Positions 1 to 13,028 are shown, counted from the first letter of the stretch. The stretch is DNA of 13,028 bases from Octopus sinensis (GCF_006345805.1 NW_021826368.1:1-13028); one strand, 5' to 3'. Notes: generated by a model from the letters alone, not told the origin. Numbers and translations are program-made.

Positions 1-182
1 TTACATTATATATAAGGGCTTAGTAAATTAAATTACTTTGCCACATACTGAACTCATTAGAAATAGCAGCTAAAGAATTTCTCTCAGCTATCTCTAATAC
101 TTAAAGAAGATCCCTCTCAGAAGTGTTTGCCTAAACAACTCACAAAAGTATGGGGGAAAAAAACATTAAAAAATCAAGTGCA

Positions 183-252
183 AAGGTTATTTGAGAACGT
201 ACGTTTCTAGATTAGTCAATTCGACATTTCTTTCTTCAGCTCAGAATTCCTT
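183..252 (-). ncRNA. Putative type I hammerhead ribozyme, unit 1
   Basis: Minus strand reads AAGG-A-AUU-C-UGAG CUGAAGA A-AGA-AAU-GUC-GAAUU-GAC-UAA-UCU-A GAA ACG-UA-CGU U^CUCA-AAU-AA-CCUU. Core CUGANGA and GAAA are present, stem III is ACG/CGU, the triplet is GUU, and stem I is UGAG/CUCA + AUU/AAU + AAGG/CCUU. Predicted cleavage falls between plus positions 196 and 195. Confidence 0.75.
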
Positions 253-732
253 GAATCGGATTTGGGAACACTGAAAGTCGGGAGCATACCCTTTCGGCTT
301 CTATCACCTCTAGAATTCTGCTCGAACTAAAAGTGCTATCAAATTCGAATATGCAAGCGAAGAATTTCTGCTCTCCCCTTTCCACCAGCGTGGGTAAATT
401 GACAAACACCATGTATTAACGGTGAAAACCGCAGCATTTAGCAGAGAGAGATGAATTATAATTTCAACAATTGGGGTAAAATTAATTAATTATTAATCAA
501 TTTCACCAAGTATTCAGTATGTAAAGGGACCATTATAGGCGAATTCAAAATATTACATTATATATAAGGGCTTAGTAAAATAAATTACTTTGCCACATAC
601 TGAACTCATTAGAAATACAGCTAAAGAATTTCTTCAGCTATCTCTATACTTAAAGAAGATCTCTCTCAGAAAGTGTTTGCCTAACCAACTCACAAAAGTA
701 TGGGGGAAAAAAACATTAAAAAACCAAGTGCA

Positions 733-802
733 AAGGTTATTTGAGAACGTACGTTTCTAGATTAGTCAATTCGACATTTCTTTCTTCAGCTCAGAATTCC
801 TT
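733..802 (-). ncRNA. Putative type I hammerhead ribozyme, unit 2
   Basis: Same 70-nt sequence as 183-252. Confidence 0.75.
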
Positions 803-1289
803 GAATCGGATTTGGGAACACTGAAAGTCGGGAGCATACCCTTTCGGCTTCTAGTCACCTCTAGAATTCTGCTCGAACTAAAAGTGCTATCAAATTCGAA
901 TATGCAAGCGAAGAATTTCTGCTCTCCCCTTTCCACCAGCGTGGGTTAAAATTGACACACCATGTATTAACGGTGAAAACCGCAGCATTTAGCAGAGAGA
1001 GATGAATTATAATTTCAACAATTGAGGGTAAAATTAATTAATTATTAATCAATTTCACCAAGTATTCAGTATGTAAAGGGACCATTATAGGCGAATTCAA
1101 AATATTACATTATATATAAGGGCTTAGTAAAAAATTACTTTGCCACATACTGAACTCATTAGAAATAGCAGCTAAAGAAATTTCTTCAGCTATCTCTAAT
1201 ACTTAAAGAGATCTCTCTCTCTCATATAGTGTTTGCCTAAACCAACTCACAAAAGTATGGGGGAAAAAAACATTAAAAAATCAAGTGCA

Positions 1290-1360
1290 AAGGTTATTTG
1301 AGAACGTACGTTTCTAGATTAGTCAATTCGACATTACTTTCTTTCAGCTCAGAATTCCTT
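1290..1360 (-). ncRNA. Hammerhead-like motif, unit 3, variant core
   Basis: Same motif, but the plus strand reads ACATTACTTTCTTTCAGC instead of ACATTTCTTTCTTCAGC, so the core becomes CUGAAAGA. It is either a defective copy or a sequencing error. Confidence 0.5.
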
Positions 1361-1844
1361 GAATCGGATTTGGGAACACTGAAAGTCGGGAGCATACCCT
1401 TTCGGCTTCTAATCACCTCTAGAATTCTGCTCGAACTAAAAGTGCTATCAAATTCGAATATGCAAGCGAAGATTTCTGCTCTCCCCTTTCCACCAGCGTG
1501 GGTTAAAATTGACAAACACCATGTATTAACGGTGAAAACCGCAGCATTTAGCAGAGAGAGATGAATTATATTTCAACAATTGAGGGTAAAATTAATTAAT
1601 TATTAATCAATTTCACAAGTATTCAGTATGTAAAGGGACCATTATAGGCGAATTCCAAATATTACATTATATATAAGGGCTTAGTAAATTAAATTACTTT
1701 GCCACATACTGAACTCATTAGAAATAGCAGCTAAGAAATTTCTTCAGCTATCTCTAATACTTAAAGAAGATCTCTCTCAGATAGTGTTTGCCTAAACCAA
1801 CTCACAAAAGTATGGGGGAAAAAAACATTAAAAAATCAAGTGCA

Positions 1845-1914
1845 AAGGTTATTTGAGAACGTACGTTTCTAGATTAGTCAATTCGACATTTCTTTCTTCA
1901 GCTCAGAATTCCTT
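1845..1914 (-). ncRNA. Putative type I hammerhead ribozyme, unit 4
   Basis: Same 70-nt sequence as 183-252. Confidence 0.75.
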
Positions 1915-2401
1915 GAATCGGATTTGGGAACACTGAAAGTCGGGAGCATACCCTTTCGGCTTCTAATCACCTCTAGAATTCTGCTCGAACTAAAAGTGCT
2001 ATCAAATTCGAATATGCAAGCGAAGAATTTCTGCTCTCCCCTTTCCACCAGCGTGGGTTAAAATTGACAACCACCATGTATTAACGGTGAAAACCGCAGC
2101 ATTTAGCAGAGAGAGATGAATTATAATTTCAACAATTGAGGGTAAAATAATTAATTATTAATCAATTTCACCAAGTATTCAGTATGTAAAGGGACCATTA
2201 TAGGCGAATTCAAAATATTACATTATATATAAGGGCTTAGTAAATTAAATTACTTTGCCACATACTGAACTCATTAGAAATAGCAGCTAAAGAAATTTCT
2301 TCAGCTATCTCTAATACTTAAAGAAGATCTCTCTCAGAAAGTGTTTGCCTAAACCAACTCACAAAAGTATGGGGGAAAAAAACATTAAAAAATCAAGTGC
2401 A

Positions 2402-2471
2402 AAGGTTATTTGAGAACGTACGTTTCTAGATTAGTCAATTCGACATTTCTTTCTTCAGCTCAGAATTCCTT
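2402..2471 (-). ncRNA. Putative type I hammerhead ribozyme, unit 5
   Basis: Same 70-nt sequence as 183-252. Confidence 0.75.
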
Positions 2472-2958
2472 GAATCGGATTTGGGAACACTGAAAGTCGG
2501 GAGCATACCCTTTCGGCTTCTAATCACCTCTAGAATTCTGCTCGAACTAAAAGTGCTATCAAATTCGAATATGCAAGCGAAGAATTTCTGCTCTCCCCTT
2601 TCCACCAGCGTGGGTTAAAATTGACAAACACCATGTATTAACGGTGAAAACCGCAGCATTTAGCAGAGAGAGATGAATTATAATTCAACAATTGAGGGTA
2701 AAATTAATTAATTATTAATCAATTTCACCAAGTATTCAGTATGTAAAGGGACCATTATAGGCGAATTCAAAATATTACATTATATATAAGGGCTTAGTAA
2801 AATAAATTACTTTGCCACATACTGAACTCATTAGAAATAGCAGCTAAAGAAATTTCTTCAGCTATCTCTAATACTTAAAGAAGATCTCTCTCAGATAGTG
2901 TTTGCCTAAACCAACTCACAAAAGTATGGGGGAAAAAAACATTAAAAAATCAAGTGCA

Positions 2959-3028
2959 AAGGTTATTTGAGAACGTACGTTTCTAGATTAGTCAATTCGA
3001 CATTTCTTTCTTCAGCTCAGAATTCCTT
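2959..3028 (-). ncRNA. Putative type I hammerhead ribozyme, unit 6
   Basis: Same 70-nt sequence as 183-252. Confidence 0.75.
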
Positions 3029-3514
3029 GAATCGGATTTGGGAACACTGAAAGTCGGGAGCATACCTTTCGGCTTCTAATCACCTCTAGAATTCTGCTCG
3101 AACTAAAAGTGCTATCAAATTCGAATATGCAAGCGAAGAATTTCTGCTCTCCCCTTTCCACCAGCGTGGGTTAAAATTGACAAACACCATGTATTAACGG
3201 TGAAAACCGCAGCATTTAGCAGAGAGAGATGAATTATAATTTCAACAATTGAGGGTAAAATTAATTAATTATTAATCAATTTCACCAAGTATTCAGTATG
3301 TAAAAGGACCATTATAGGCGAATTCAAAATATTACATTATATATAAGGGCTTAGTAAAATAAATTACTTTGCCACATACTGAACTCATTAGAAATAGCAG
3401 CTAAAGAAATTTCTTCAGCTATCTCTAATACTTAAAGAAGATCTCTCTCAGATAGTGTTTGCCTAAATCAACTCACAAAAGTATGGGGGAAAAAACATTA
3501 AAAAATCAAGTGCA

Positions 3515-3584
3515 AAGGTTATTTGAGAACGTACGTTTCTAGATTAGTCAATTCGACATTTCTTTCTTCAGCTCAGAATTCCTT
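3515..3584 (-). ncRNA. Putative type I hammerhead ribozyme, unit 7 (partial unit)
   Basis: Same 70-nt sequence as 183-252. Confidence 0.75.
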
Positions 3585-3653
3585 GAATCGGATTTGGGAA
3601 CACTGAAAGTCGGGAGCATACCGTTTCGGCTTCTAATCACCTCTAGAATTCTG

Positions 3654-3769
3654 CTTCTTTAAGTATTAGAGATAGCTGAAGAAATTTCTTTAGCTGCTAT
3701 TTCTAATGACTTCAGCATGTGGCAAAGTAATTTATTTTACGAAGCCCTTATATATAACGTAATATTTTG
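3654..3769 (+). repeat. Inverted 116-bp fragment of the tandem unit capping the array
   Basis: Reverse complement of 3325-3440 with 4 substitutions in 116 bp. A 2-bp CT overlap marks the junction with the direct copy (3654-3655). Confidence 0.97.
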
Positions 3770-3953
3770 TATATATATATATATACATGCATATATATAT
3801 ATATGTATATATATATATGTATATATATATATGTATATATATATATATGTATATATATACATATGTATATATATGTATATTATATATATATATATAATAT
3901 ATGTATATATATATGTACATATATGTATATATATATATGTATATATATATACG

Positions 3954-3985
<32 letters not shown>

Positions 3986-4366
3986 TATGTATATATGTAA
4001 TATATATATATGTATATATATATGTGTATATATATATTATGTATATATATATAGTATATATATACATATGTATATATATATGTGTATATATATATGTATA
4101 AATATATACATAAATAATATATATATATGTGTATATATATACGTATATATATATATGTATAATATATATGTATATATATATTATATATATATATATACTA
4201 TATATATATATATACAATATATATATATATATATATATACAATATATATATATATACATATATAATATATATATATATATACATACATATATATATATAT
4301 ACATATATAATATATATATATATACATATATAATATATATGTATATATATATATATATCTATATAC

Positions 4367-4397
<31 letters not shown>

Positions 4398-4403
4398 CAT
4401 GTG

Positions 4404-4439
<36 letters not shown>

Positions 4440-4440
4440 T

Positions 4441-4471
<31 letters not shown>

Positions 4472-4507
4472 ATATATATATATATATGTATTTATATATA
4501 TATGTAT

Positions 4508-4538
<31 letters not shown>

Positions 4539-4833
4539 ATATATATATATATGTATATGTATATGTATATATGTATTATATATATATGTATATATATAAT
4601 ATGTATATATATATTATCTATATATATGTATATATATATATGTATATATATATATGTATATATATATATAATATATATATATATGTATATATTATCTATA
4701 TATTATATATATATAATATGTATATATATATATGTATATTAGATATATATATATATGTATATCTATATATATATATATGTATATAATATATATATATGTA
4801 TATATATATTATATATAATGTATATATATATAG

Positions 4834-4865
<32 letters not shown>

Positions 4866-4904
4866 ATATATATATATATTATATATATATATATATATAA
4901 TATA
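3770..4904. repeat. Long imperfect (AT)n microsatellite with ATGT/ATAC interruptions
   Basis: About 1.1 kb of TA dinucleotides. It explains all the YIYI-type ORFs in the track. Confidence 0.98.
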
Positions 4905-4951
4905 TCATCATCATCATCGTTTAGCGTCCGTTTTCCATGCTAGCCTGGGTT
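4905..4951 (-). mobile_element. 47-bp 3'-terminal fragment of an RTE-family LINE/SINE with (GAT)n tail
   Basis: Reverse complement AACCCAGGCTAGCATGGAAAACGGACGCTAAACGATGATGATGATGA matches 8420-8460 at 38 of 41 positions. Confidence 0.9.
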
Positions 4952-4974
4952 ACATATATATATATATATGTGTG

Positions 4975-5050
<76 letters not shown>
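4952..5050. repeat. (AT)n microsatellite
   Basis: Nearly pure TA repeat. Confidence 0.97.
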
Positions 5051-5057
5051 AATACGT

Positions 5058-7855
5058 AAGGTAATCGAGGTAGTCAGAGTAAGTGACAGAGTAATTAAAA
5101 TTAGATTAGTTCTTCACCATAGGACAGCTACCATCATCTAGGCATATGCCCCTCAACCAGGGCTACCGGAAGGACAAAAAGACCAATTCTATGACACCCT
5201 ATTTCGGACTACCTCATTGACAAATGACAGTGACCTTCTCTTCGTGGCAGGTGATTTCAATGGACATGTTGGACGACATGTCGGGGGCTTCCATGGCGTC
5301 CATGGAGGCTACGGTTTTGGCTCTCGAAATGAGGAAGGAACCAGCCTGCTGGAGTTCTGCGATGCAAATGACCTTATGGTCTGCAATACCCACTTCAGGA
5401 AACCCACCTCTCACCTAGTCACCTACCGTTCTGGCAGACACACCAGCCAGATTGACTACATCCTTGCCAGAAAAAGGGAAAGAGGGCTGATTATAAATAC
5501 CAAAACCTTCCCAGGCGAAGAATGTACTCCCCAACATAGATTAGTAGTTAGCGACTTCAGGATCAGAGCTAAATGGTTGCCCAGAAGAAGACCAGGTTGG
5601 AGGAGAAGGGTCTGGAAGCTTAAAGATCCTGCAAATGGACAGAGATTTAGAGACATACTACTCGAAGCCTCTGACGAAATAGAAGGGGATATAGCTTCAC
5701 TTAATGTGGAAGACAACTGGAGATTCCTATGGGACAATCTGCTGACAGCCATTGACCAGATCTGTGGATGGAGCAAAATACCATCTCGACCCAGAGTAAC
5801 ATGGTGGTGGAACACTGTGGTTGACAGGGCTATTAGACAAAAGAGACAGGCTTGGAAGGACTGGAAGAACGGTGGTAGCAGGGAATTGTATCAGACAGCC
5901 AAAAGGGAAGCTAGGAGACAGGTTTATTTAGCCAGAGGGGAAGCGGATAAGAAAAAATTTGCCAATGTTCTGAGCCGTGAGGATGAAAGACTTGAGGTAT
6001 TTCGTGTTGCAAGACAGTGTGTGAGAGAGAATCGTGATGTGGTAGGAGAGAAGTGTGTTCGCATGGATGATGGTTCACTTGCGCTAAATGAGGATGCAAA
6101 GAGAGAGGTTTGGAGATGCCACTATGAAAGGTTGCTGAATAAAGAAAATGAATGGGATAAAGAGAGTCTGCCGAATGTTGACCCAACAGAGGGACCAGCT
6201 ATCCGAGTTGATAGTTCCGTGGTAGCTAAGGCAATTAGAAGCATGAAGACAGGGAAAGCCCCAGATCCATCAGGAATTACTGCAGAGATGCTCAAAATAT
6301 CTGGCAGTGTCGGCTATAACCTAGTCACCCGTATAGTCAACCAGGTGATACACGAAGGAGTCATACCCAATGACTGGTGTAGCAGCATACTAGTCAACTG
6401 CTACAAAGGTAAAGGTGATGCCCTGGATACAAATAATTACAGAGGTATCAAGCTGTTGGATCAGGTAATGAAGGTTACGGAGAGGGTCATAGCCCAACTA
6501 ATTAGAGAGAGAGTTAGTTTAGATGAGATGCAGTTTGGGTTTGTCCCAGGGAAAAGCACCACTGATGCTATATTCCTGGTAAGGCAGCTGCAGGAGAAAT
6601 ACCTAGCCAAAGATAAGCCCCTGTACCTGGCTTTCGTTGACATGGAGAAAGCCTTTGATAGGGTCCCCCGATCCCTCATCTGGTGGTCAATGAGGAGACT
6701 AGGGATAGATGAATGGCTGGTGAGGGCTGTGCAAGCCATGTACAGAGATGCCGTAAGTAAGGTTAGAGTTGGCAGCATGTACACAGAAGAATCAAGGTAG
6801 AGGTTGGGGTCCACCAGGGTCAGTACTCAGCCCCCTCCTATTTATCATAGTCCTCCAGGCAATTGTGGAGGAATTCAAGACAGGTTGCCCCTGGGAGCTC
6901 CTCTATGCTGACGACCTCGCTCTAATCGCTGAGTCACTATCAGAACTGGAGGAGAAGTTCCAGGTGTGGAAGGAGGGTTAGAATCGAGGGGCCTTAGAGT
7001 CAACCTAGCTAAAACCAAAGTACTAATAAGTAGAAAGTTAGAAAATCCACAAATATCCTCAGGAAGATGGCCCTGCTCGATCTGTAGAAAAGGTGTAGGT
7101 AGAAACTCTATAAGATGTACCCAGTGTAAGCTATGGACACATAAGAGGTGCAGCAATGTCAAAGGTAGGCTAACTGGGAAGATAGTTTTTGTATGTGGCA
7201 GATGCTCTGGAGCATTGACCTCCGAAAATCTGCAGAAAACAACTTCCGTCACTTTCCGGGGGAAAAACTAGAAGTAGTTGATAGCTTCCGCTATCTAGGT
7301 GACCAAGTCAGTAGTGGGGGCGGGTGCGCTGAAAGTGTAACTGCTAGAATAAGAATAGCCTGGGCAAAGTTTAGGGAGCTCTTACCTCTGCTGGTGACTA
7401 AAGGCCTCTCGCTCAGAGTAAAAGGCAGACTGTATGATGCATGTGTACGAACAGCTATGCTACATGGCAGTGAAACATGGGCCGTGACTGCTGAGGACAT
7501 GCGTAAGCTTGTGAGGAACGAAGCCAGTATGCTCCGATGGATGTGTAATGTCAGTGTACTTACTCGACAGAGCGTTAGTACCTTGAGAGAAATGTTGTAC
7601 CTAAGAAGCATCAGTTGTTGTGTGCAAGAGAGACGATTGCGCTGGTATGGTCATGTGGCGAGAATGGATGAAGATAGGTGTGTGAGAAAGTGCCAATCCC
7701 TAGCAGTTGAGGGAACCCGTGGAAGAGGTAGACCCAGGAAAACCTGGGACGAAGTGGTGAAGCACGACCTTCGGACGTTAGGTCTCACCATGGAAATGAC
7801 TAGAGACCGAGACCTATGGAAGTATGCTGTGCGTGAGAAGACCCGGCAAGACTAG
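5058..7855 (+). pseudogene. RTE endonuclease-reverse transcriptase polyprotein, disrupted
   Basis: APE part: [18 protein letters not shown]...II*AYAPQ (TAG at 5139-5141), GDFNGHVG, SQIDYIL. RT part: YKGKGD..NYRGIKL, QFGFVPGKSTTDAIF, FVDMEKAFDRV, GVHQGSVLSPLLF, YADDL, VDSFRYLG. It ends VREKTRQD* at 7855. Four 1-bp losses at ~6792, ~6819, ~6979 and ~7258-7262 join ORFs 5217-6800, 6769-6981, 6966-7271 and 7193-7855. Confidence 0.93.
7074..7205 (+). other. C4HC3 (PHD-like) zinc finger within the RTE polyprotein
   Basis: CSIC-RKGVGRNSIR-CTQC-KLWT-H-KR-C-SNVKGRLTGKIVFV-CGRC, i.e. C-x2-C-x10-C-x2-C-x4-H-x2-C-x14-C-x2-C. Confidence 0.85.
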
Positions 7856-7953
7856 TGAAGCCATAATCCGTGGCCCCTACCTGGGACGTAGTCAGTCCAC
7901 CTGTGCATACCTTCCTTCTTGTGACACTTGTGAAGACCTGTTGAGGCAAGTGA

Positions 7954-7988
7954 GAATCGAATCAAATCAAATCGAACCAAATCAAAAT
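7954..7988 (+). repeat. (RAATC)n pentanucleotide tract in the RTE 3' UTR
   Basis: GAATC GAATC AAATC AAATC GAACC AAATC AAAAT. Confidence 0.85.
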
Positions 7989-8026
7989 AGATGAACATCA
8001 ATGGAATTTGTATCCTTGTGGTACCA

Positions 8027-8306
8027 GTGCCGGTGGCACATAAGAAAACCATTCGAACGTGATCGTAGCCAGTACCGCAACGACTGGCCTCCGTGCTGAG
8101 GGCACATAACAAACACCATCTGAGCGTGGCCGTCCGCCAGCCCCGTCTGGCACCTGTGTCGGTGACACATAGAAAACACCATCCGAGCGTGGCCGTCAGC
8201 CAGCCTCGTCTGGCACCTGTGTCGGTGGCACATAAAAAACACCATCCGAGCGTGGCCGTCTGCCAGCCTCGTCTGGCACCTGTGTCGGTGGCACATAAAA
8301 TCACCC
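8027..8306 (+). repeat. 63-bp minisatellite in the RTE 3' UTR (3 full units, 1 degenerate upstream unit, 1 partial)
   Basis: G(G/A)CACATA..AAACACCATC(C/T)GAGCGTGGCCGTC.GCCAGCC.CGTCTGGCACCTGTGTCGGT starts at 8101, 8164 and 8227, with a partial at 8290. A diverged 66-bp unit lies at 8035-8100. Confidence 0.95.
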
Positions 8307-8460
8307 ACTACACTCTCGGAGTGGTTGGCGTTAGGAAGGGCATCCAGCTGTAGAAACACTGCCAGATCTGACTGGCCTGGTGCAGCCTTCGGGCTTGCCA
8401 GACCCCAGTTGAACCGTCCAACCCATGCTAGCATGGAAAGCGGACGTTAAACGATGATGA

Positions 8461-9196
8461 AATAAATAAATATATATTATAAATATATAAATATATATTA
8501 TAAATATATATATAAAATAAATAAATATATATTTCCATTTCTTTTTTTTTTTTCTTTGCTTAAACTCTGTAAACCTCCTGGCGTGTTTTCCCTCAGCTGT
8601 TTTATTATTTTTTTCTTATTATTATTATTAGAAGTATAGTCGCAATTAGTTTTATTATAGAAGAATTTGTCTGTTGCGACGGACAAATATATATATTTCC
8701 ATTTCTCTTTTCCTCTGCTTAGATATATATGTTTGTGTATATATATGTATATGTATCATATATATATGTATGTGTATATATTATATGTATATGTATAAAC
8801 TCTAAAATCTTTTGGCTTGTTTTCTTTCAGCTGTTTTATTATTATTTATTAATATTATTATTATTATTATTTTATTTTATTATCTATTATTATTATCACT
8901 TGTTAAATATATATGTGTGTATACATATATATGTATATGTGTTATATATATATGTGTGTGTGTATATACTATATATATATATAAACTCTGTAAAATCTCC
9001 TGGCCTGTTTTCTTTCAGCTGTTTTATTATTATTATTATTTTATTATTTCTTACTATTATTACTTTTGTTTATATATGTTTTTTTATTATTATTATTGTT
9101 TCTTTTTATACTCACTTGTTACTCTTGTCTATATATGTGCATGTGCACACGTGTATACATGTGTGTATGTGTGTGTGTGTGTATACATGTGTATGT
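8461..9196. repeat. AT-rich low-complexity region: (AT)n, (TAT)n, (GT)n, with a ~45-bp motif present three times
   Basis: AAACTCTGTAAA..CTCCTGGC.TGTTTTC..TCAGCTGTTTT-like copies at ~8562, ~8797 and ~8983, each followed by (TAT)n. Confidence 0.85.
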
Positions 9197-9496
9197 CCCA
9201 ATAGCTTCGTTTAGAATTCTGTCTGTCTCTTCAGTTCTCTCCCTTACGCTACTCTGTCTGTCTCTTCAGTTCTCTCCCTTACGCTTCTCTGTCTGTCTCT
9301 TCAGTTCTTTCCCTTACGCCCCTCCTTGGCCCAATAGCTTCGTTTAGAATTCTGTCTGTCTCTTCAGATCTCTCCCTTACGCTTCTCTGTCTGTCTCTTC
9401 AGTTCTCTCCCTTACGCTTCTCTGTCTGTCTCTTCAGTTCTCTCCCTTACGCTTCTCTGTCTGTCTCTTCAGTTCTCTCCTTACGCCTCTCCTTGT
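9197..9496. repeat. 35-bp pyrimidine-rich minisatellite in two higher-order blocks (3 + 4 units)
   Basis: TCTGTCTGTCTCTTCAGTTCTCTCCCTTACGCTTC at 9218, 9253 and 9288, then at 9351, 9386, 9421 and 9456. Each block is headed by CCCAATAGCTTCGTTTAGAAT (9197, 9330). Confidence 0.96.
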
Positions 9497-9613
9497 CGCT
9501 TCTACCTACTTTCCTCTCTCAGCTCTCAATCTCTCTCTGAGGCATAGACGCTTTCTCTATCTTCCTTCAGCTCTCAGTCTCTCCTCTCCTCTTCTCTCTT
9601 GCTCTCTTCTCTT

Positions 9614-9956
9614 GGCTCCCAATCTCTCCTTAAGTACATAGACGCTCTCTTCTCTATTACCCCTACCCCCCTATTGCACTATGGATAATATAAATTAATA
9701 TAATTAGATAGATAGATAGATAAAATATCAAGAATGTCCAGAGCCTGGAAACGTGATGAACTGGCGTGGTTCTTACTCTCGGCTCCCAATTTCTCCTTAA
9801 GTACATAGACGCTCTCTTCTCTACTCTCCTCCCAACCCTCCCCATATTGCACTATTAGATTAATATAAATTAATATAATATAATTAGATAGACAGATAGA
9901 TAGATAAAATATCAAGAATGTCCAGAACCTGAAAACGTGACGAACTGGCGTGGTTC
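9614..9956 (+). repeat. ~167-bp direct duplication containing (GATA)n and the ORF1 start codon
   Basis: GGCTCCCAAT.TCTCCTTAAGTACATAGACGC...AAAATATCAAGAATGTCCAGA.CCTG.AAACGTGA.GAACTGGCGTGGTTC occurs at 9614-9772 and 9781-9956. Confidence 0.95.
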
Positions 9957-10790
9957 CTGCAGGGTGGCAATGCGCTGACGAGAAAATCCAAATAATATAA
10001 TTACGGCTGCGCTGAAGAACAACGGATACAAAAGGACGTCAGCTCAAATAGAGCGGAAGAAGCAAGAATTTATACGCTCCTACGCACTTGTCAGATCGCA
10101 CATTAACACGCTGGATGCCATTTTTGACAGCGAAAAACGCGAACAAAGTAAAGATGGCAAGGATAGAGACGCGGGCGCTGATGAGGAGGGTCACCCCCAC
10201 CTGGTAGATGCCCAGGAAGAAAACTCCAGCGAGAGGCCTGTCCGGGAGATGAACCCAGGTGCGGATGCTCCTACCGGCACCAAAAGCCATGGACATGGAG
10301 ATGAAGAAGCCAAAAAAAGAGGAAAAACTGAAGCTAAAACTCAGACAAAGCCAAGGGGCAAGGCAGCCAGGGATAGAGGCAAACCTAACTATCCATATGC
10401 CAAAAAGGATGGAAACAAGCAGCGCACACGGGTATGTAGGTTCTACCTGAAAGGTGCCTGCCGGCATGGAGAAGAAGGTGCAGGCTGCCGCTTTGCACAC
10501 CGGGACCCTGCCACAGAAACCAACCACCGAAAGGAAATGGGATGGACCACGCATCACCTGCCCCAAAACGGAGGTACGCAGATGTGGTGCGTACCACAAA
10601 CCACCAACGTGTTGTTGAAAGGGCAGCTGCTGAGCAGGAATCTTTTTTGTGCATGGCACAAAAGATTGTACAGCAGCTAACCTGGCTCCATCAGGCTCAG
10701 GCTCGCAGATGGAACTGCCCACGGTTCACAAGACCGCCACAGCAGATGGACCCAGGGTGGACACGCGGCAACAGCATACACCTCACCTCG
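9918..10790 (+). pseudogene. ORF1-like protein: Myb/SANT-like N-terminus, charged linker, CCCH zinc finger (reconstructed)
   Basis: ATG at 9918, TGA at codon 5 (TGG in the upstream duplicate) and a frameshift near 9983-9986. The frame is then open from 9979: NPNNIITAALKNNGYKRTSAQIERKKQEFIRSYALVRSHINTLDAIF...CRFYLKGACRHGEEGAGCRFAH (10435-10500). A probable 1-bp loss at ~10501 leads into PCHRN...RRYADVV...QESFL. Confidence 0.7.
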
Positions 10791-13028
10791 ATGCTCCTAC
10801 TGAACATCAGAGGACTACTAACACACAGTAACAGGACAAAAGTCCCGTTCCTGAGAGACTTTGTCGCATGCAATCAAGCCTTATGCATAGCACTCACAGA
10901 AACGCATCTGAAACCGGACATAGCAGATGCGGAGTTACACATACCACAGTATGTTGTACTGGACGACAGGAAAGAAAGGAGTCATGGAGGAGTTGCTATG
11001 TACATCCGTGGGGACCTCACACCCCAGGTCCTTTTGTCATACTCAAACTCGGTGTGTGACACACTAATTGTACACATAAGGCAACTTGATGTAGTTGTGT
11101 GTGCTACATATCGCCCTCCAGATGCCCCAAGTCATATGGGCAAGTTTGAGGACTGCCTTTTAAAAATAGAAGAAGTTCTAACCACATTAGAACAACACAT
11201 AAGTGTACTTCTCATGGGAGACTTCAATCTACCGAATGTCAGATGGCCCGAGGGCCTTTCTCTCCCAGGAATGACAAGATGTGAACGAGGACAGGCGAGG
11301 TCCCTCCTGAACCTCATCAACACCCTGTACATGGAGCAAGTAATACTCCAAACAACCAAAGCAGGTAACACACTGTATCTCTGCTTCACAAATAATATGG
11401 ATCTCATCCATAATGTGAAAGTGACACCGACACTACTCTCGGATCACAACATGGTAGAGAGCCATGTACGGGCCAAAAGAGAGCACGGACATGCAGCCTA
11501 CAAGAAACCCTCAGAATCTTTCCAGCTTGAACTACCATAAGGCAAACTGGAACAAATTGAGAAAGAGATCCTCAAACAAAACTGGCCTGAATGTCTCTCC
11601 TCGCCGGACATCGACATGATACTTCAACAATTCATGTCTGTAATGCAAGCCATATGCTACAAATGTGTCCCAGAGAGAAGGCCACTGTACACAAGAACAA
11701 AATCCCCAGAGAGAGGAAAATTTTAATGAGACGGCGTACAAAAATTTCAAATCGCCTAAACAAACAAATTGAAAGCAGTGAAAAGTCCCGCCTGAAAATA
11801 AAACTGTTGGAAATTGAAAATTGTCTGCAACTCTCCCATGAGAAGGAAAGAGCAGACAAAGAAGCCTGGGCTATAGACAACATACGAACTAACCCCAGAG
11901 CTTTCTACAGGTATGCCAAAGAAACAGCTACGGTGCACTGTAGGAAAGGGCCACTCCTTGAAAAGGATGGCACACTCACAGGAAAACCAATGAGGGTAAG
12001 TGAAATACTGAATGAACAATTCAAGAGTGTTTTCACTCCACCCCTTGGGCATTTCCAAATCAGCAATCCAACTGACTTCATTACCACTGCAGATATAGAA
12101 TCAGAGGCGGCGACGATAAATTACATCGATATAAAGGAAGACGATGTAATAAAGGCTATAGATGAAATGAAAACAGACTCAGCTATTGGCCCCGATGGAT
12201 TCCCGGCAATCCTCCTAAAAGTATGTAAGAGAGTCTTAGCAAGACCACTGCAGTTCCTCTTTCAGAGCTTCCTTGCAGCTGGCAAACTTCCAAGAAAACT
12301 GAAGGAAGGTAAGGCCAAGAACTACAGACCTATCTCTCTGACCTCACACATCAGCAAGGTCATGGAACGAATAGTCAGAAGGAAACTAATCACCTTCCTT
12401 GAAGAAAATAACTTGCTGCCTGACACCCAACATGGTTTCCGACCAGGAAGAAGCTGCTTAACTCAGCTCCTGCAGCACTATGACTGGGTGCTGAAACAAC
12501 TGCTCAACCACTCAAATGTGGAAGTCATATATCTCGACTTCGCAAAGGCCTTCGATAAAGTCGATCATGGAATGATATGTCACAAACTGCGTGATCTTGG
12601 CATAGTTGGAAAACTAGGAGAATGGCTTCACGACTTTCTGAAGAATAGAAGTCAGGTGGTAGTAGCCAATGGGGCCACTTCCATTAGCACGCAAATAGTG
12701 AGCGGTGTTCCACAGGGCACTGTTTTGGGACCACTACTGTTCATAATGGCACTCTCAGACATGCCCTCAGCCACGCGGAGAGCCACGATCACAAGTTATG
12801 CAGATGATACAAAAGTTTCACAGGCAATACAGAACCCTGAAGACACTAAGCACCTGCAATATGAGCTGGACGATATATACAAGTGGGCTGAAAAGAATAG
12901 CATGCAGTTCAATGCTGAAAAGTTTCAAGCTTTTACTATCAGCATGCAAAACTGAATGCAATACCCAAAGAATACACTGGACCCGGAGGGATTGCAATCC
13001 CAGAGGCACAATCAGTGCGTGACCTGGG
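10791..13028 (+). pseudogene. CR1-like ORF2: AP endonuclease + reverse transcriptase, disrupted and incomplete at the window end
   Basis: APE motifs MLLLNIRGL, IALTETHL, HGGVAMY, YRPP, GDFNLP, SDH. RT motifs NYRPISLTS, QHGFR, DFAKAFDKV, GVPQGTVLGP, YADD (12797), ending VRDLG. Frameshifts at ~11460, ~11551, ~11676 and ~12935, and an apparent in-frame deletion at ~12310. Confidence 0.92.

What the first reader, a model, noticed from the sequence alone, without database searches (positions are those of the whole stretch)
1..3655. Tandem ~557-bp repeat in which every unit carries a type I hammerhead ribozyme on the minus strand (retrozyme-like array)
Seen: each unit contains, antisense, AAGG-A-AUU-C-UGAG|CUGAAGA|A-AGA-AAU-GUC-GAAUU-GAC-UAA-UCU-A|GAA|ACG-UA-CGU|U^CUCA-AAU-AA-CCUU. 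Both core motifs sit in the right order, all three stems form by eye, and an 11-bp interrupted stem I closes the fold. Established: type I hammerheads in tandem repeats are known from newt satellite 2, Schistosoma Sm-alpha, Dolichopoda pDo500, metazoan non-LTR retrozymes and the pseudo-LTRs of Penelope-like elements. Inference: this 'satellite' is a non-coding, self-cleaving retroelement whose multimeric transcript would be cut into ~557-nt monomers. That is longer than the non-LTR retrozymes I recall (roughly 170-400 nt). I cannot tell whether this family has been described.
Basis: partly seen in the sequence, partly recalled or inferred. Interest (0 to 1): 0.92.

Follow-up and report, generated by a model that had tools for sequence, protein, structure and literature searches.

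The report
Hammerhead-ribozyme tandem repeat (retrozyme-like)
A 557-bp non-coding repeat, present 6.6 times in a row in what looks like a mollusc genome, carries on its minus strand a hammerhead self-cleaving RNA motif of the weak, pair-forming kind known from animal retrozymes and Penelope-like elements, so it is most likely one more family of a known class and not a new kind of element.

Summary
Window 1-3654 is a tandem array of about 6.6 units of 550-559 bp, 97-99% identical. Six of the seven hammerhead (HHR) copies are identical and intact; the unit-3 copy has a broken CUGANGA box. The motif meets the field's core consensus (CUGAAGA / GAAAC / GUU) in type I topology.

For a real HHR:
- Helix III (ACGUACGU) is a perfect palindrome, as in all four experimentally validated retrozyme HHRs I could read.
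- No such motif turned up in 8x10^8 random bases.
- The HHR strand folds far better than its complement (z -5.3 vs -2.7).
- The array's 5' end sits head-to-head with an inverted 119-nt copy next to a 1.3-kb (TA)n tract, as at Penelope-like element insertions.

Against:
- No Rfam hammerhead model matches, even at E<=10.
- A model I built from the four validated retrozyme HHRs scores it at background level (8.1 bits).
- The conserved G10.1-C11.1 pair is replaced by A.A.
- The hammerhead is not the minimum-energy fold.
- I found no diverged copies, so covariation is untested.

The 557-nt length is not exceptional: published consensus lengths run 51-972 bp. Verdict: probably a new member of a known kind (non-LTR retrozyme with a dimer-dependent HHR). 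Cleavage is unproven. Interest is moderate to low.

The parts
1..3654 (-). Tandem array of about 6.6 units of roughly 557 bp (550-559). The sense (HHR) strand is the minus strand. The array is cut by the left edge of the window.
   Evidence: spacing, 97-99% identity; GC 0.34-0.37
183..252 (-). HHR copy 1 (70 nt, intact). Predicted cleavage after GUU, between window positions 196 and 195.
733..802 (-). HHR copy 2 (intact). Predicted cleavage between 746 and 745.
1290..1360 (-). HHR copy 3, defective. The box reads CUGAAAGA (1-nt insertion) and there is an A-to-U change in helix II.
   Evidence: not found by the descriptor
1845..1914 (-). HHR copy 4 (intact). Predicted cleavage between 1858 and 1857.
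2402..2471 (-). HHR copy 5 (intact). Predicted cleavage between 2415 and 2414. This copy was used for the folding tests.
2959..3028 (-). HHR copy 6 (intact). Predicted cleavage between 2972 and 2971.
3515..3584 (-). HHR copy 7 (intact). Predicted cleavage between 3528 and 3527.
2415..2971 (-). One predicted 557-nt monomer RNA, from cleavage site to cleavage site. About 63% of its bases are paired in the circular fold.
3654..3772 (+). Inverted 119-nt partial unit (sense positions 89-207, 96% identical to the unit). It joins the 5' end of the array head-to-head.
3770..5054 (.). Imperfect (TA)n microsatellite of 1.28 kb that abuts the inverted copy. Probably the insertion target.
   Evidence: microsatellite/(TA)n insertion bias of Penelope-like elements in PMC8557442

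Best explanation
The array is a non-autonomous, non-coding retroelement of the animal 'non-LTR retrozyme' type, probably derived from or mobilised by Penelope-like elements (PLEs).

Proposed mechanism:
1. The minus strand is transcribed as a multimer (inferred).
2. Each unit carries a type I hammerhead with a 4-bp proximal helix I, a long interrupted helix II, and a helix III of only two base pairs capped by the palindromic loop GUAC (shown in the sequence).
3. A single copy is unstable, so two copies pair through ACGUACGU into an 8-bp shared helix III, a double hammerhead. [quoted passage not shown]
4. A host RtcB-type ligase circularises the monomers into a highly self-paired circular RNA (inferred).
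5. A reverse transcriptase copies the circle more than once round. The tandem cDNA is inserted into a (TA)n microsatellite, leaving a head-to-head inverted partial copy (inferred from the junction).
For: - The core CUGAAGA / GAAAC / GUU is exact in 6 of 7 units and sits in type I order. This matches the consensus CUGANGA/GAAAY/RUH used by Cervera and de la Pena.
Helix II is present in both the minimum-energy and centroid folds.
- Helix III is a perfect 8-nt palindrome starting with A and ending with U. The four validated retrozyme HHRs have the same design: ACAGUACUGU, ACGCGCGU, ACACGUGU and ACAUGU.
- In 8x10^8 random bases there were 174 relaxed-descriptor hits and none with a palindromic helix III.
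- A mismatch at the base of helix II has a cleaving precedent. Axolotl HHR_Amex2 has U.U there, cleaves 22% in 1 h as a monomer, and cleaves much more efficiently as a dimer.
- A short helix I, a long helix II, an extra nucleotide after A9 and a small palindromic helix III are the published traits of PLE hammerheads.
- The sense-strand monomer folds at -152.7 kcal/mol, z -5.55, with 0 of 100 shuffles as stable. The other strand gives -118.8, z -2.42.
- In circular folds the sense strand has 20-25 G.U pairs against 7-12 on the other strand.
- The strand difference is -32.6 kcal/mol against a paired-shuffle null of -13.3 +/- 6.1, with 0 of 120 shuffles reaching it.
- GC is 34-37%. The unit has no coding capacity and no relatives of the stretch searched.
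- The array's 5' end joins an inverted truncated copy next to (TA)n. That matches the PLE insertion architecture described in PMC8557442.
Against: - No Rfam hammerhead family matches at gathering score, at E<=10 over 3.8 kb, or at E<=10 over 106 nt.
- A covariance model built from four validated retrozyme HHRs aligns the motif in the correct register but scores only 8.1 bits. Background hits in the same window score 8.2-10.2 bits.
- The highly conserved G10.1-C11.1 pair is replaced by A.A.
- No loop 1-loop 2 tertiary contact is recognisable.
- The hammerhead fold (-4.0 kcal/mol) is not the minimum-energy fold (-5.7), and the 70-nt segment is no more stable than shuffles (z +1.33).
- The double-hammerhead dimer (-22.6) lies above the dimer minimum (-26.0), which instead pairs GAA with the cleavage-site bases.
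- The units are nearly identical and I found no diverged copies in any collection, so there is no covariation evidence.
- One copy in the array is already broken.
- The window holds no PLE, only two endonuclease/reverse-transcriptase LINE remnants.
- No promoter was identified.
Confidence: 0.65

Rival explanations
1. Relic hammerhead. The motif descends from a real retrozyme or PLE hammerhead but is now impaired or dead, with A.A in place of G10.1-C11.1 and an irregular helix II. The array now grows only as ordinary satellite DNA by unequal crossing-over.
For: - The conserved G10.1-C11.1 pair is missing (sequence; for its conservation).
- Covariance-model scores are at background level.
- One unit has a broken box with no sign of selection against it.
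- The units are 97-99% identical, as expected from recent DNA-level homogenisation.
- PLE hammerheads have very low activity in vitro even when intact.
Against: - Six copies keep every invariant core base.
- The axolotl HHR with U.U at the same place still cleaves.
- The strand-specific excess of RNA structure, with many G.U pairs, points to recent selection or origin at the RNA level.
Confidence: 0.2
2. Chance resemblance. This is an ordinary AT-rich satellite whose unit happens to contain CUGAAGA and GAAA at a workable distance, with short complementary flanks.
For: - The relaxed descriptor gives about 2x10^-7 hits per base, which means hundreds of chance hits in a Gb-sized genome.
- Neither Rfam nor the custom covariance model gives support.
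- The hammerhead is not the minimum-energy fold.
- There is no comparative evidence.
Against: - The chance of a relaxed hit in one 557-bp unit is 2.4x10^-4. With the palindromic helix III there were 0 hits in 8x10^8 bases.
- The motif also satisfies GAAAY/RUH and the 4+3+4-bp helix I.
- It lies on the strand with the significant excess of RNA structure.
Confidence: 0.12
3. The repeat is not an independent element. It is a run of pseudo-LTR pieces from a full-length Penelope-like element whose coding part lies outside the window.
For: - The hammerhead has PLE-type traits.
- The array end has a PLE-like inverted copy and a (TA)n context.
- Retrozymes and pseudo-LTRs are reported to be sister sequences.
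Against: Six and a half uninterrupted units contain no reverse transcriptase or GIY-YIG reading frame. The only reverse transcriptases in the window are APE-type LINEs beyond the (TA)n tract.
Confidence: 0.03

Closest known systems
Mytilus galloprovincialis non-LTR retrozyme (construct Rtz Mg353; Cervera and de la Pena 2020, PMC7229834)
   Same: - Low-GC tandem repeat with one type I hammerhead per unit.
- Helix III is an 8-nt perfect palindrome (ACGCGCGU there, ACGUACGU here).
- The core follows CUGANGA/GAAAC.
- The archetypal loop 1-loop 2 contacts are absent.
- The host is a mollusc, and the window's host is probably one too.
   Different: - The unit is 350-390 bp there and 557 bp here.
- Helix II there is a regular 4-bp stem closed by G10.1-C11.1 with a 5-nt loop. 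Here it is 25 nt, interrupted, and opens with A.A.
- H17 is C there and U here.
- The mussel element has shown cleavage and circular RNA; this one has not been tested.
- The custom model that includes the mussel hammerhead gives only 8.1 bits.
Axolotl HHR_Amex2 / retrozyme Rtz353 and newt satellite 2
   Same: - There is a mismatch at the base of helix II (U.U there, A.A here).
- Helix III is two base pairs with a palindromic tetraloop (ACACGUGU).
- Activity is weak as a monomer and much better as a dimer.
- The repeats are tandem.
   Different: - The host is a vertebrate.
- Units are 330-350 bp.
- Helix I is a canonical 6 bp and helix II a canonical 4 bp, with loop-loop contacts.
- The genome holds about 10^5 copies.
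Minimal or atypical hammerheads in the pseudo-LTRs of Penelope-like elements (Cervera and de la Pena 2014, PMC4209133)
   Same: - Helix I is short (4-5 bp).
- Helix II is longer than usual and sometimes bulged.
- There is an unpaired nucleotide right after A9.
- Helix III is small and palindromic.
- They are expected to work as dimers.
- Insertions carry an inverted 5'-truncated copy and favour microsatellites.
   Different: - PLE hammerheads keep G10.1-C11.1.
- They flank a reverse transcriptase plus GIY-YIG reading frame about 3 kb long. Here the repeats follow one another directly with no reading frame.
Other hammerhead satellites: Schistosoma Sm-alpha and cave-cricket pDo500
   Same: Tandem or dispersed repeats transcribed into self-cleaving type I hammerhead RNAs.
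   Different: - Those hammerheads are canonical, and as far as I know the Rfam Hammerhead_1 model was built from hammerheads of that kind.
- Sm-alpha is SINE-like, described in PMC6765202 as a promoter followed by a hammerhead. From my own knowledge that promoter is a Pol III type; no B-box is present here.

Membership tests
Hammerhead ribozyme, type I | Conserved catalytic centre CUGANGA ... GAAA(Y) ... (R)UH in that order | tested here: met
   CUGAAGA / GAAAC / GUU is exact in 6 of 7 units. The consensus wording comes from PMC7229834.
Hammerhead ribozyme, type I | Three helices around the core, with helix I open and helices II and III closed | tested here: met
   All 19 proposed pairs are Watson-Crick. 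Helix II appears in the minimum-energy and centroid folds, but the full hammerhead is not the minimum-energy fold (-4.0 vs -5.7 kcal/mol).
Hammerhead ribozyme, type I | G10.1-C11.1 pair closing helix II | tested here: not met
   The positions are A and A. The alternative reading is an A-U first pair flanked by unpaired A on both sides (sequence). Conservation of the pair is stated in PMC4209133. A cleaving exception with U.U exists.
Hammerhead ribozyme, type I | Match to a hammerhead covariance model | tested here: not met
   Rfam 15 gives no hammerhead family at gathering score or at E<=10. Custom model R1, built from 4 validated retrozyme HHRs, gives 8.1 bits, E 1.2 over the window, against a background of 8.2-10.2 bits.
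Hammerhead ribozyme, type I | Helices kept by compensatory changes among diverged copies | not testable with these tools
   The units are 97-99% identical. No relatives were found in the protein, viral, metagenome or prokaryote-genome collections. No animal genome collection is available.
Hammerhead ribozyme, type I | Mg-dependent site-specific self-cleavage | not testable with these tools
   This needs an experiment.
Animal non-LTR retrozyme | [quoted passage not shown] | tested here: met
   There are 6.6 units of about 557 bp with one motif each. The published length range is 51-972 bp.
Animal non-LTR retrozyme | GC below 50% and no coding capacity (LTR, PBS and PPT were not searched for) | tested here: met
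   GC is 0.34-0.37. The longest stop-free stretch in near-consensus units is 62 codons, and the one stretch searched has no protein relatives. The unit has no internal sub-repeat.
Animal non-LTR retrozyme | Weak, palindromic helix III that allows a dimeric hammerhead | tested here: met
   ACGUACGU is a perfect palindrome, as in 4 of 4 validated retrozyme constructs. The double-hammerhead structure evaluates to -22.6 kcal/mol, though the dimer minimum is -26.0.
Animal non-LTR retrozyme | Monomer RNA predicted to be stable and highly self-paired | tested here: met
   z is -5.55 (linear) and -5.27 (circular), with about 63% of bases paired. The strand asymmetry has z -3.1.
Animal non-LTR retrozyme | Expressed as linear and circular monomer RNA | not testable with these tools
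   No transcriptome of the source organism is available.
Animal non-LTR retrozyme | Target-site duplications and co-resident Penelope-like elements | not testable with these tools
   The left end of the array is outside the window. Only one 13-kb window is available.
Penelope-like element (autonomous) | Reverse transcriptase plus GIY-YIG endonuclease reading frame between pseudo-LTRs | tested here: not met
   The array has no such reading frame. The window's reverse transcriptases carry APE-type endonuclease domains, so they are LINEs.
Penelope-like element (autonomous) | Insertion architecture: inverted 5'-truncated copy head-to-head, with a microsatellite target | tested here: met
   The inverted 119-nt copy at 3654-3772 abuts the array's 5' end and the (TA)n tract. 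The architecture is as described in PMC8557442. This is a resemblance only, since satellite edges can also invert by recombination.

The most novel reading that the evidence does not exclude
The hammerhead is catalytically active even though it has A.A instead of G10.1-C11.1 and a 25-nt interrupted helix II. That would define a hammerhead subtype that current covariance models cannot see. In addition, the head-to-head inverted copy inside a (TA)n tract would be a direct footprint of a retrozyme array being integrated by Penelope-like element machinery, possibly the first such family noted in a cephalopod-like mollusc.
Probability: 0.3. Interest if true: 0.45.

Novelty: new member of a known kind. 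Interest (0 to 1): 0.33.

Why it matters
If the motif cleaves, this is another lineage-specific retrozyme family producing abundant small circular RNA. It would have two useful twists.

First, it lacks the G10.1-C11.1 pair and escapes every Rfam hammerhead model. That would show that model-based surveys under-count animal hammerheads and would widen the known tolerated sequence space.

Second, one end of the array is preserved with an inverted truncated copy in a (TA)n microsatellite. This is the kind of junction expected if Penelope-like element enzymes mobilise retrozymes. That link is currently supported mainly by co-occurrence and by sequence relatedness between retrozymes and pseudo-LTRs.

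If it does not cleave, it is an ordinary satellite and of little interest.

Tried and rejected
- **Rfam 15.** Searches at gathering score and at E<=10 over 3.8 kb and over 106 nt found no hammerhead or any other ribozyme family. The only hits were far below threshold (mir-31-like hairpin, ceN30, snR46), which I treat as chance.
- **Custom covariance model.** Model R1, built from four validated retrozyme HHRs, gave 8.1 bits, not above background. With only four GC-rich training sequences this is a weak test, but it is negative.
- **Thermodynamics.** The 70-nt segment and its homodimer are not more stable than shuffles. This is uninformative for weak AT-rich dimeric hammerheads.
- **Threaded structure energies.** The energies for one strand's structure placed on the other strand are invalid, because non-canonical pairs are mis-scored. 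I did not use them.
- **Search for diverged copies.**
  - Exact look-up of a spurious reading frame in the repeat and of a LINE reading frame found nothing on record.
  - A protein-word search with the longest stop-free stretch of the unit found no candidates.
  - The viral contig pattern scan found none.
  - The metagenome scan gave one GC-rich chance hit, L001.
  - The prokaryote genome scan gave one chance hit, L004; by eye it lies inside what looks like a Clp-type ATPase coding sequence, which I did not verify.
- **Literature string search.** The core sequence matched only unrelated papers.
- **Host identification.** The best named relatives of the LINE reverse transcriptase are from Argonauta hians at 54-56% identity. 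The closest unnamed hits gave only accessions I could not resolve. The host is therefore 'probably a mollusc, perhaps a cephalopod', not proven.
- **Other checks.**
  - No Pol III B-box and no tRNA-like promoter.
  - No internal sub-repeat that would make 557 bp a higher-order unit.
  - No other copies of the unit in 3773-13028.
Full report
**1. What is in the sequence**

Window 1-3654 is a head-to-tail array of a unit of about 557 bp. The repeat finder places 6-7 copies in register with start-to-start spacings of 550-559 bp. TRF did not report it only because its longest period is 500. A MAFFT alignment of the seven units shows 97-99% identity, and most differences are single-base indels. GC is 0.34-0.37, against 0.43-0.52 in the non-microsatellite parts of the window to the right. 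The array runs off the left edge of the window. The unit has no internal sub-repeat and no other copy in 3773-13028.

The unit is non-coding:
- The longest stop-free stretch in near-consensus units is 62 codons.
- An 88-codon ORF exists only in the variant unit 3.
- The 62-codon stretch has no protein relatives among 5.8 billion sequences.

**2. The hammerhead motif**

The core-to-core pattern occurs seven times on the minus strand, once per unit, and never in 200 shuffles. Six copies are identical over all 70 nt. The seventh, at 1290-1360, has an extra A in the box (CUGAAAGA) and an A-to-U change in helix II, so it is probably dead.

| Element | Layout |
|---|---|
| Helix I | 4 bp next to the core, a bulged C, 3 bp, a 1x2 internal loop, then 4 bp |
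| Helix II | an A.A juxtaposition at 10.1/11.1, 3 bp, a 3x3 internal loop, 3 bp, then the loop GAAUU |
| Helix III | A15.1-U16.1 and C15.2-G16.2 capped by GUAC |

However, the whole element ACGUACGU is a perfect palindrome, so two copies can form an 8-bp shared helix III. H17 is U, so cleavage would fall after GUU, between window positions 196 and 195 and their equivalents in the other units. The motif satisfies the consensus CUGANGA / GAAAY / RUH that the retrozyme authors use.

**3. Is it more than chance?**

I wrote a relaxed type I descriptor with these rules:
- an exact core;
- helix I of at least 4 bp;
- helix II of at least 3 bp, with a mismatch allowed at 10.1/11.1;
- helix III of at least 2 bp.

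In the real window it finds only the six intact copies, on the minus strand. Its hit rates in random sequence were:

| Background | Hits | Rate |
|---|---|---|
| 4x10^7 bases, first-order Markov, array composition | 28 | 7x10^-7 per base |
| 8x10^8 bases, independent, same composition | 174 | 2.2x10^-7 per base; 2.4x10^-4 per 557-bp unit, both strands |

Of the 174 hits, 45 also had a second helix I segment. None had a palindromic helix III. The bare core-plus-stems pattern would therefore occur hundreds of times by chance in a Gb-sized genome. The full set of features in one satellite unit is very unlikely to be chance.

**4. Evidence against a canonical hammerhead**

- No Rfam 15 hammerhead family matches at gathering score, at E<=10 over 1-3800, or at E<=10 over a 106-nt stretch centred on one copy.
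- I took four experimentally validated retrozyme hammerheads from the supplement of PMC7229834 (coral Amil224, mussel Mg353, axolotl Ax353 and Ax330). I aligned them, built a covariance model with the hammerhead structure, and searched the window with filters off.
  - The six intact copies score 8.1 bits (E 1.2). Unrelated hits elsewhere in the window score 8.2-10.2 bits.
  - The model does align the motif end to end in the correct register, but it skips helix II as a local end.
  - A four-sequence, GC-rich model is a weak test, but the result is negative.
- The G10.1-C11.1 pair is described as highly conserved even in Penelope-element hammerheads (PMC4209133). It is absent here.
- The hammerhead fold (-4.0 kcal/mol) is not the minimum-energy fold (-5.7), and the 70-nt segment is no more stable than shuffles (z +1.33).
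- The double hammerhead evaluates to -22.6 kcal/mol against a dimer minimum of -26.0, and shuffled dimers are as stable.

**5. Evidence for a real, dimer-type hammerhead**

- All four validated retrozyme hammerheads have a helix III element that starts with A, ends with U and is a perfect palindrome: ACAGUACUGU, ACGCGCGU, ACACGUGU and ACAUGU. ACGUACGU has the same design and differs from the mussel element only in its two central bases.
- The axolotl Ax353 hammerhead has a U.U mismatch at the base of helix II. It still cleaves 22% in one hour as a monomer and much more efficiently as a dimer. A mismatch at 10.1/11.1 is therefore not disqualifying.
- Published traits of Penelope-element hammerheads all apply here:
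  - a longer helix II, sometimes bulged;
  - an unpaired nucleotide right after A9;
  - a small palindromic helix III;
  - low in vitro activity and action as dimers.

**6. The RNA as a whole**

The results for the predicted 557-nt monomer (2415-2971) on each strand are:

| Measure | Minus (HHR) strand | Plus strand |
|---|---|---|
| Linear minimum free energy | -152.7 kcal/mol, z -5.55, 0 of 100 shuffles as stable | -118.8 kcal/mol, z -2.42 |
| Circular fold, six monomers | -135 to -146.5 kcal/mol | -108 to -118 kcal/mol |
| G.U pairs in circular fold | 20-25 | 7-12 |
| Bases paired (circular fold) | about 63% | not computed |

A paired test folds each shuffle and its own complement. The observed strand difference is -32.6 kcal/mol, against -13.3 +/- 6.1 in the shuffles. 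None of 120 shuffles reached it (z -3.1). The strand that carries the hammerhead therefore has an excess of RNA-level structure beyond what base composition explains. This matches the description of retrozyme circular RNAs as stable and highly self-paired.

**7. The right end of the array**

The array stops at 3654/3655 and is followed directly by a 119-nt inverted copy of sense positions 89-207 of the unit, 96% identical (3654-3772). That copy runs into a 1.28-kb imperfect (TA)n tract at 3770-5054. In the hammerhead orientation this is the 5' end of the array, so the two copies meet head to head.

Craig et al. (PMC8557442) describe this arrangement for Penelope-like element insertions. An inverted 5'-truncated copy lies next to the upstream repeat, and insertions favour microsatellites, (TA)n in the Naiad clade. 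This is a resemblance and not proof, because satellite edges can also invert by recombination. It does agree with the proposal that animal retrozymes are non-autonomous relatives of Penelope-like elements. The window itself holds no such element. Its two retrotransposon remnants carry APE-type endonuclease and RVT_1 domains, so they are LINEs.

**8. Comparison with what is known, and novelty**

Type I hammerheads in tandem repeats of animals are a well-described class: the non-LTR retrozymes. The 2020 paper gave sizes of 170-400 nt. A 2026 preprint reports consensus lengths of 51-972 bp, averaging 650 bp in ray-finned fishes. A length of 557 bp is therefore inside the known range.

I found no record of this particular sequence. 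The library has no paper describing a cephalopod hammerhead. The host could not be named, since the best named relatives of one LINE are from the octopod Argonauta hians at 54-56% identity.

I file the element as a probable new member of a known kind with a variant hammerhead: no G10.1-C11.1 pair, a long interrupted helix II, and no match to current covariance models.

**9. Verdict**

| Explanation | Confidence |
|---|---|
| Retrozyme-type array with a dimer-dependent type I hammerhead | about 0.65 |
| Hammerhead-derived but now inactive relic in a satellite | about 0.20 |
| Chance motif in an ordinary satellite | about 0.12 |
| Fragment of a larger Penelope-like element | about 0.03 |

Cleavage, circular RNA and covariation remain untested and need the source genome, its transcriptome and a bench assay. 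Interest is 0.33.

Noticed in passing
window 3654-3772: Inverted 119-nt partial copy of the repeat unit (96% identical), joined head-to-head to the end of the array and running into the (TA)n tract. It resembles the inverted 5'-truncated copies seen at Penelope-like element insertions.
   Followed up: yes
window 3770-5054: Imperfect (TA)n microsatellite of 1.28 kb (652 copies, 80% matches) with scattered C and G interruptions. GC falls to 0.07-0.11.
   Followed up: partly
window 2268-2319 and the equivalent place in each unit (e.g. 51-102, 1153-1204): Each unit holds a 22-nt near-perfect palindrome or hairpin (AGCUGAAGAAAUUUCUUUAGCU on the minus strand). It shares an 11-nt string, AGCUGAAGAAA, with the hammerhead box. 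Rfam gives only weak mir-31-like hits (20 bits against a gathering score of 51). It lies about 20 nt from the breakpoint of the inverted copy.
   Followed up: partly
window 1107-1663 (unit 3): This is the most diverged unit. It has a broken hammerhead box, an apparent 3-nt insertion plus substitutions near 1208-1216, and an 88-codon open frame that the other units lack. Many differences between units are 1-nt indels in homopolymer runs, which could be long-read assembly errors.
   Followed up: partly
window 5217-7855 (+): Degraded LINE. It has a partial APE-type endonuclease plus RVT_1 reading frame (5217-6800), a PHD/C1-like zinc-finger frame (6966-7271) and a further frame (7193-7855), split by frame changes.
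   Followed up: partly
window 8101-8300: GC-rich 63-bp tandem repeat, 3.2 copies, 93% matches, just downstream of the first LINE remnant.
   Followed up: no
window 8460-9491: Cluster of AT-rich micro- and minisatellites (8460-9140), followed by a 35-bp CT-rich repeat of 8 copies that also reads as a 133-bp higher-order repeat of 1.9 copies at 97% (9197-9491).
   Followed up: no
window 10249-12955 (+): Second LINE, with a CCCH zinc-finger first reading frame, an APE endonuclease (10542-11540) and RVT_1 (11591-12955). The best named relatives are hypothetical proteins of the octopod Argonauta hians (54-56% identity). An unnamed metagenome protein is 83% identical over 40% of the query.
   Followed up: partly
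window 444-508 (+): Weak Rfam hit to the Caenorhabditis snoRNA ceN30 (24.2 bits against a gathering score of 65, E 0.054) inside the repeat unit. I judge it a chance hit.
   Followed up: no
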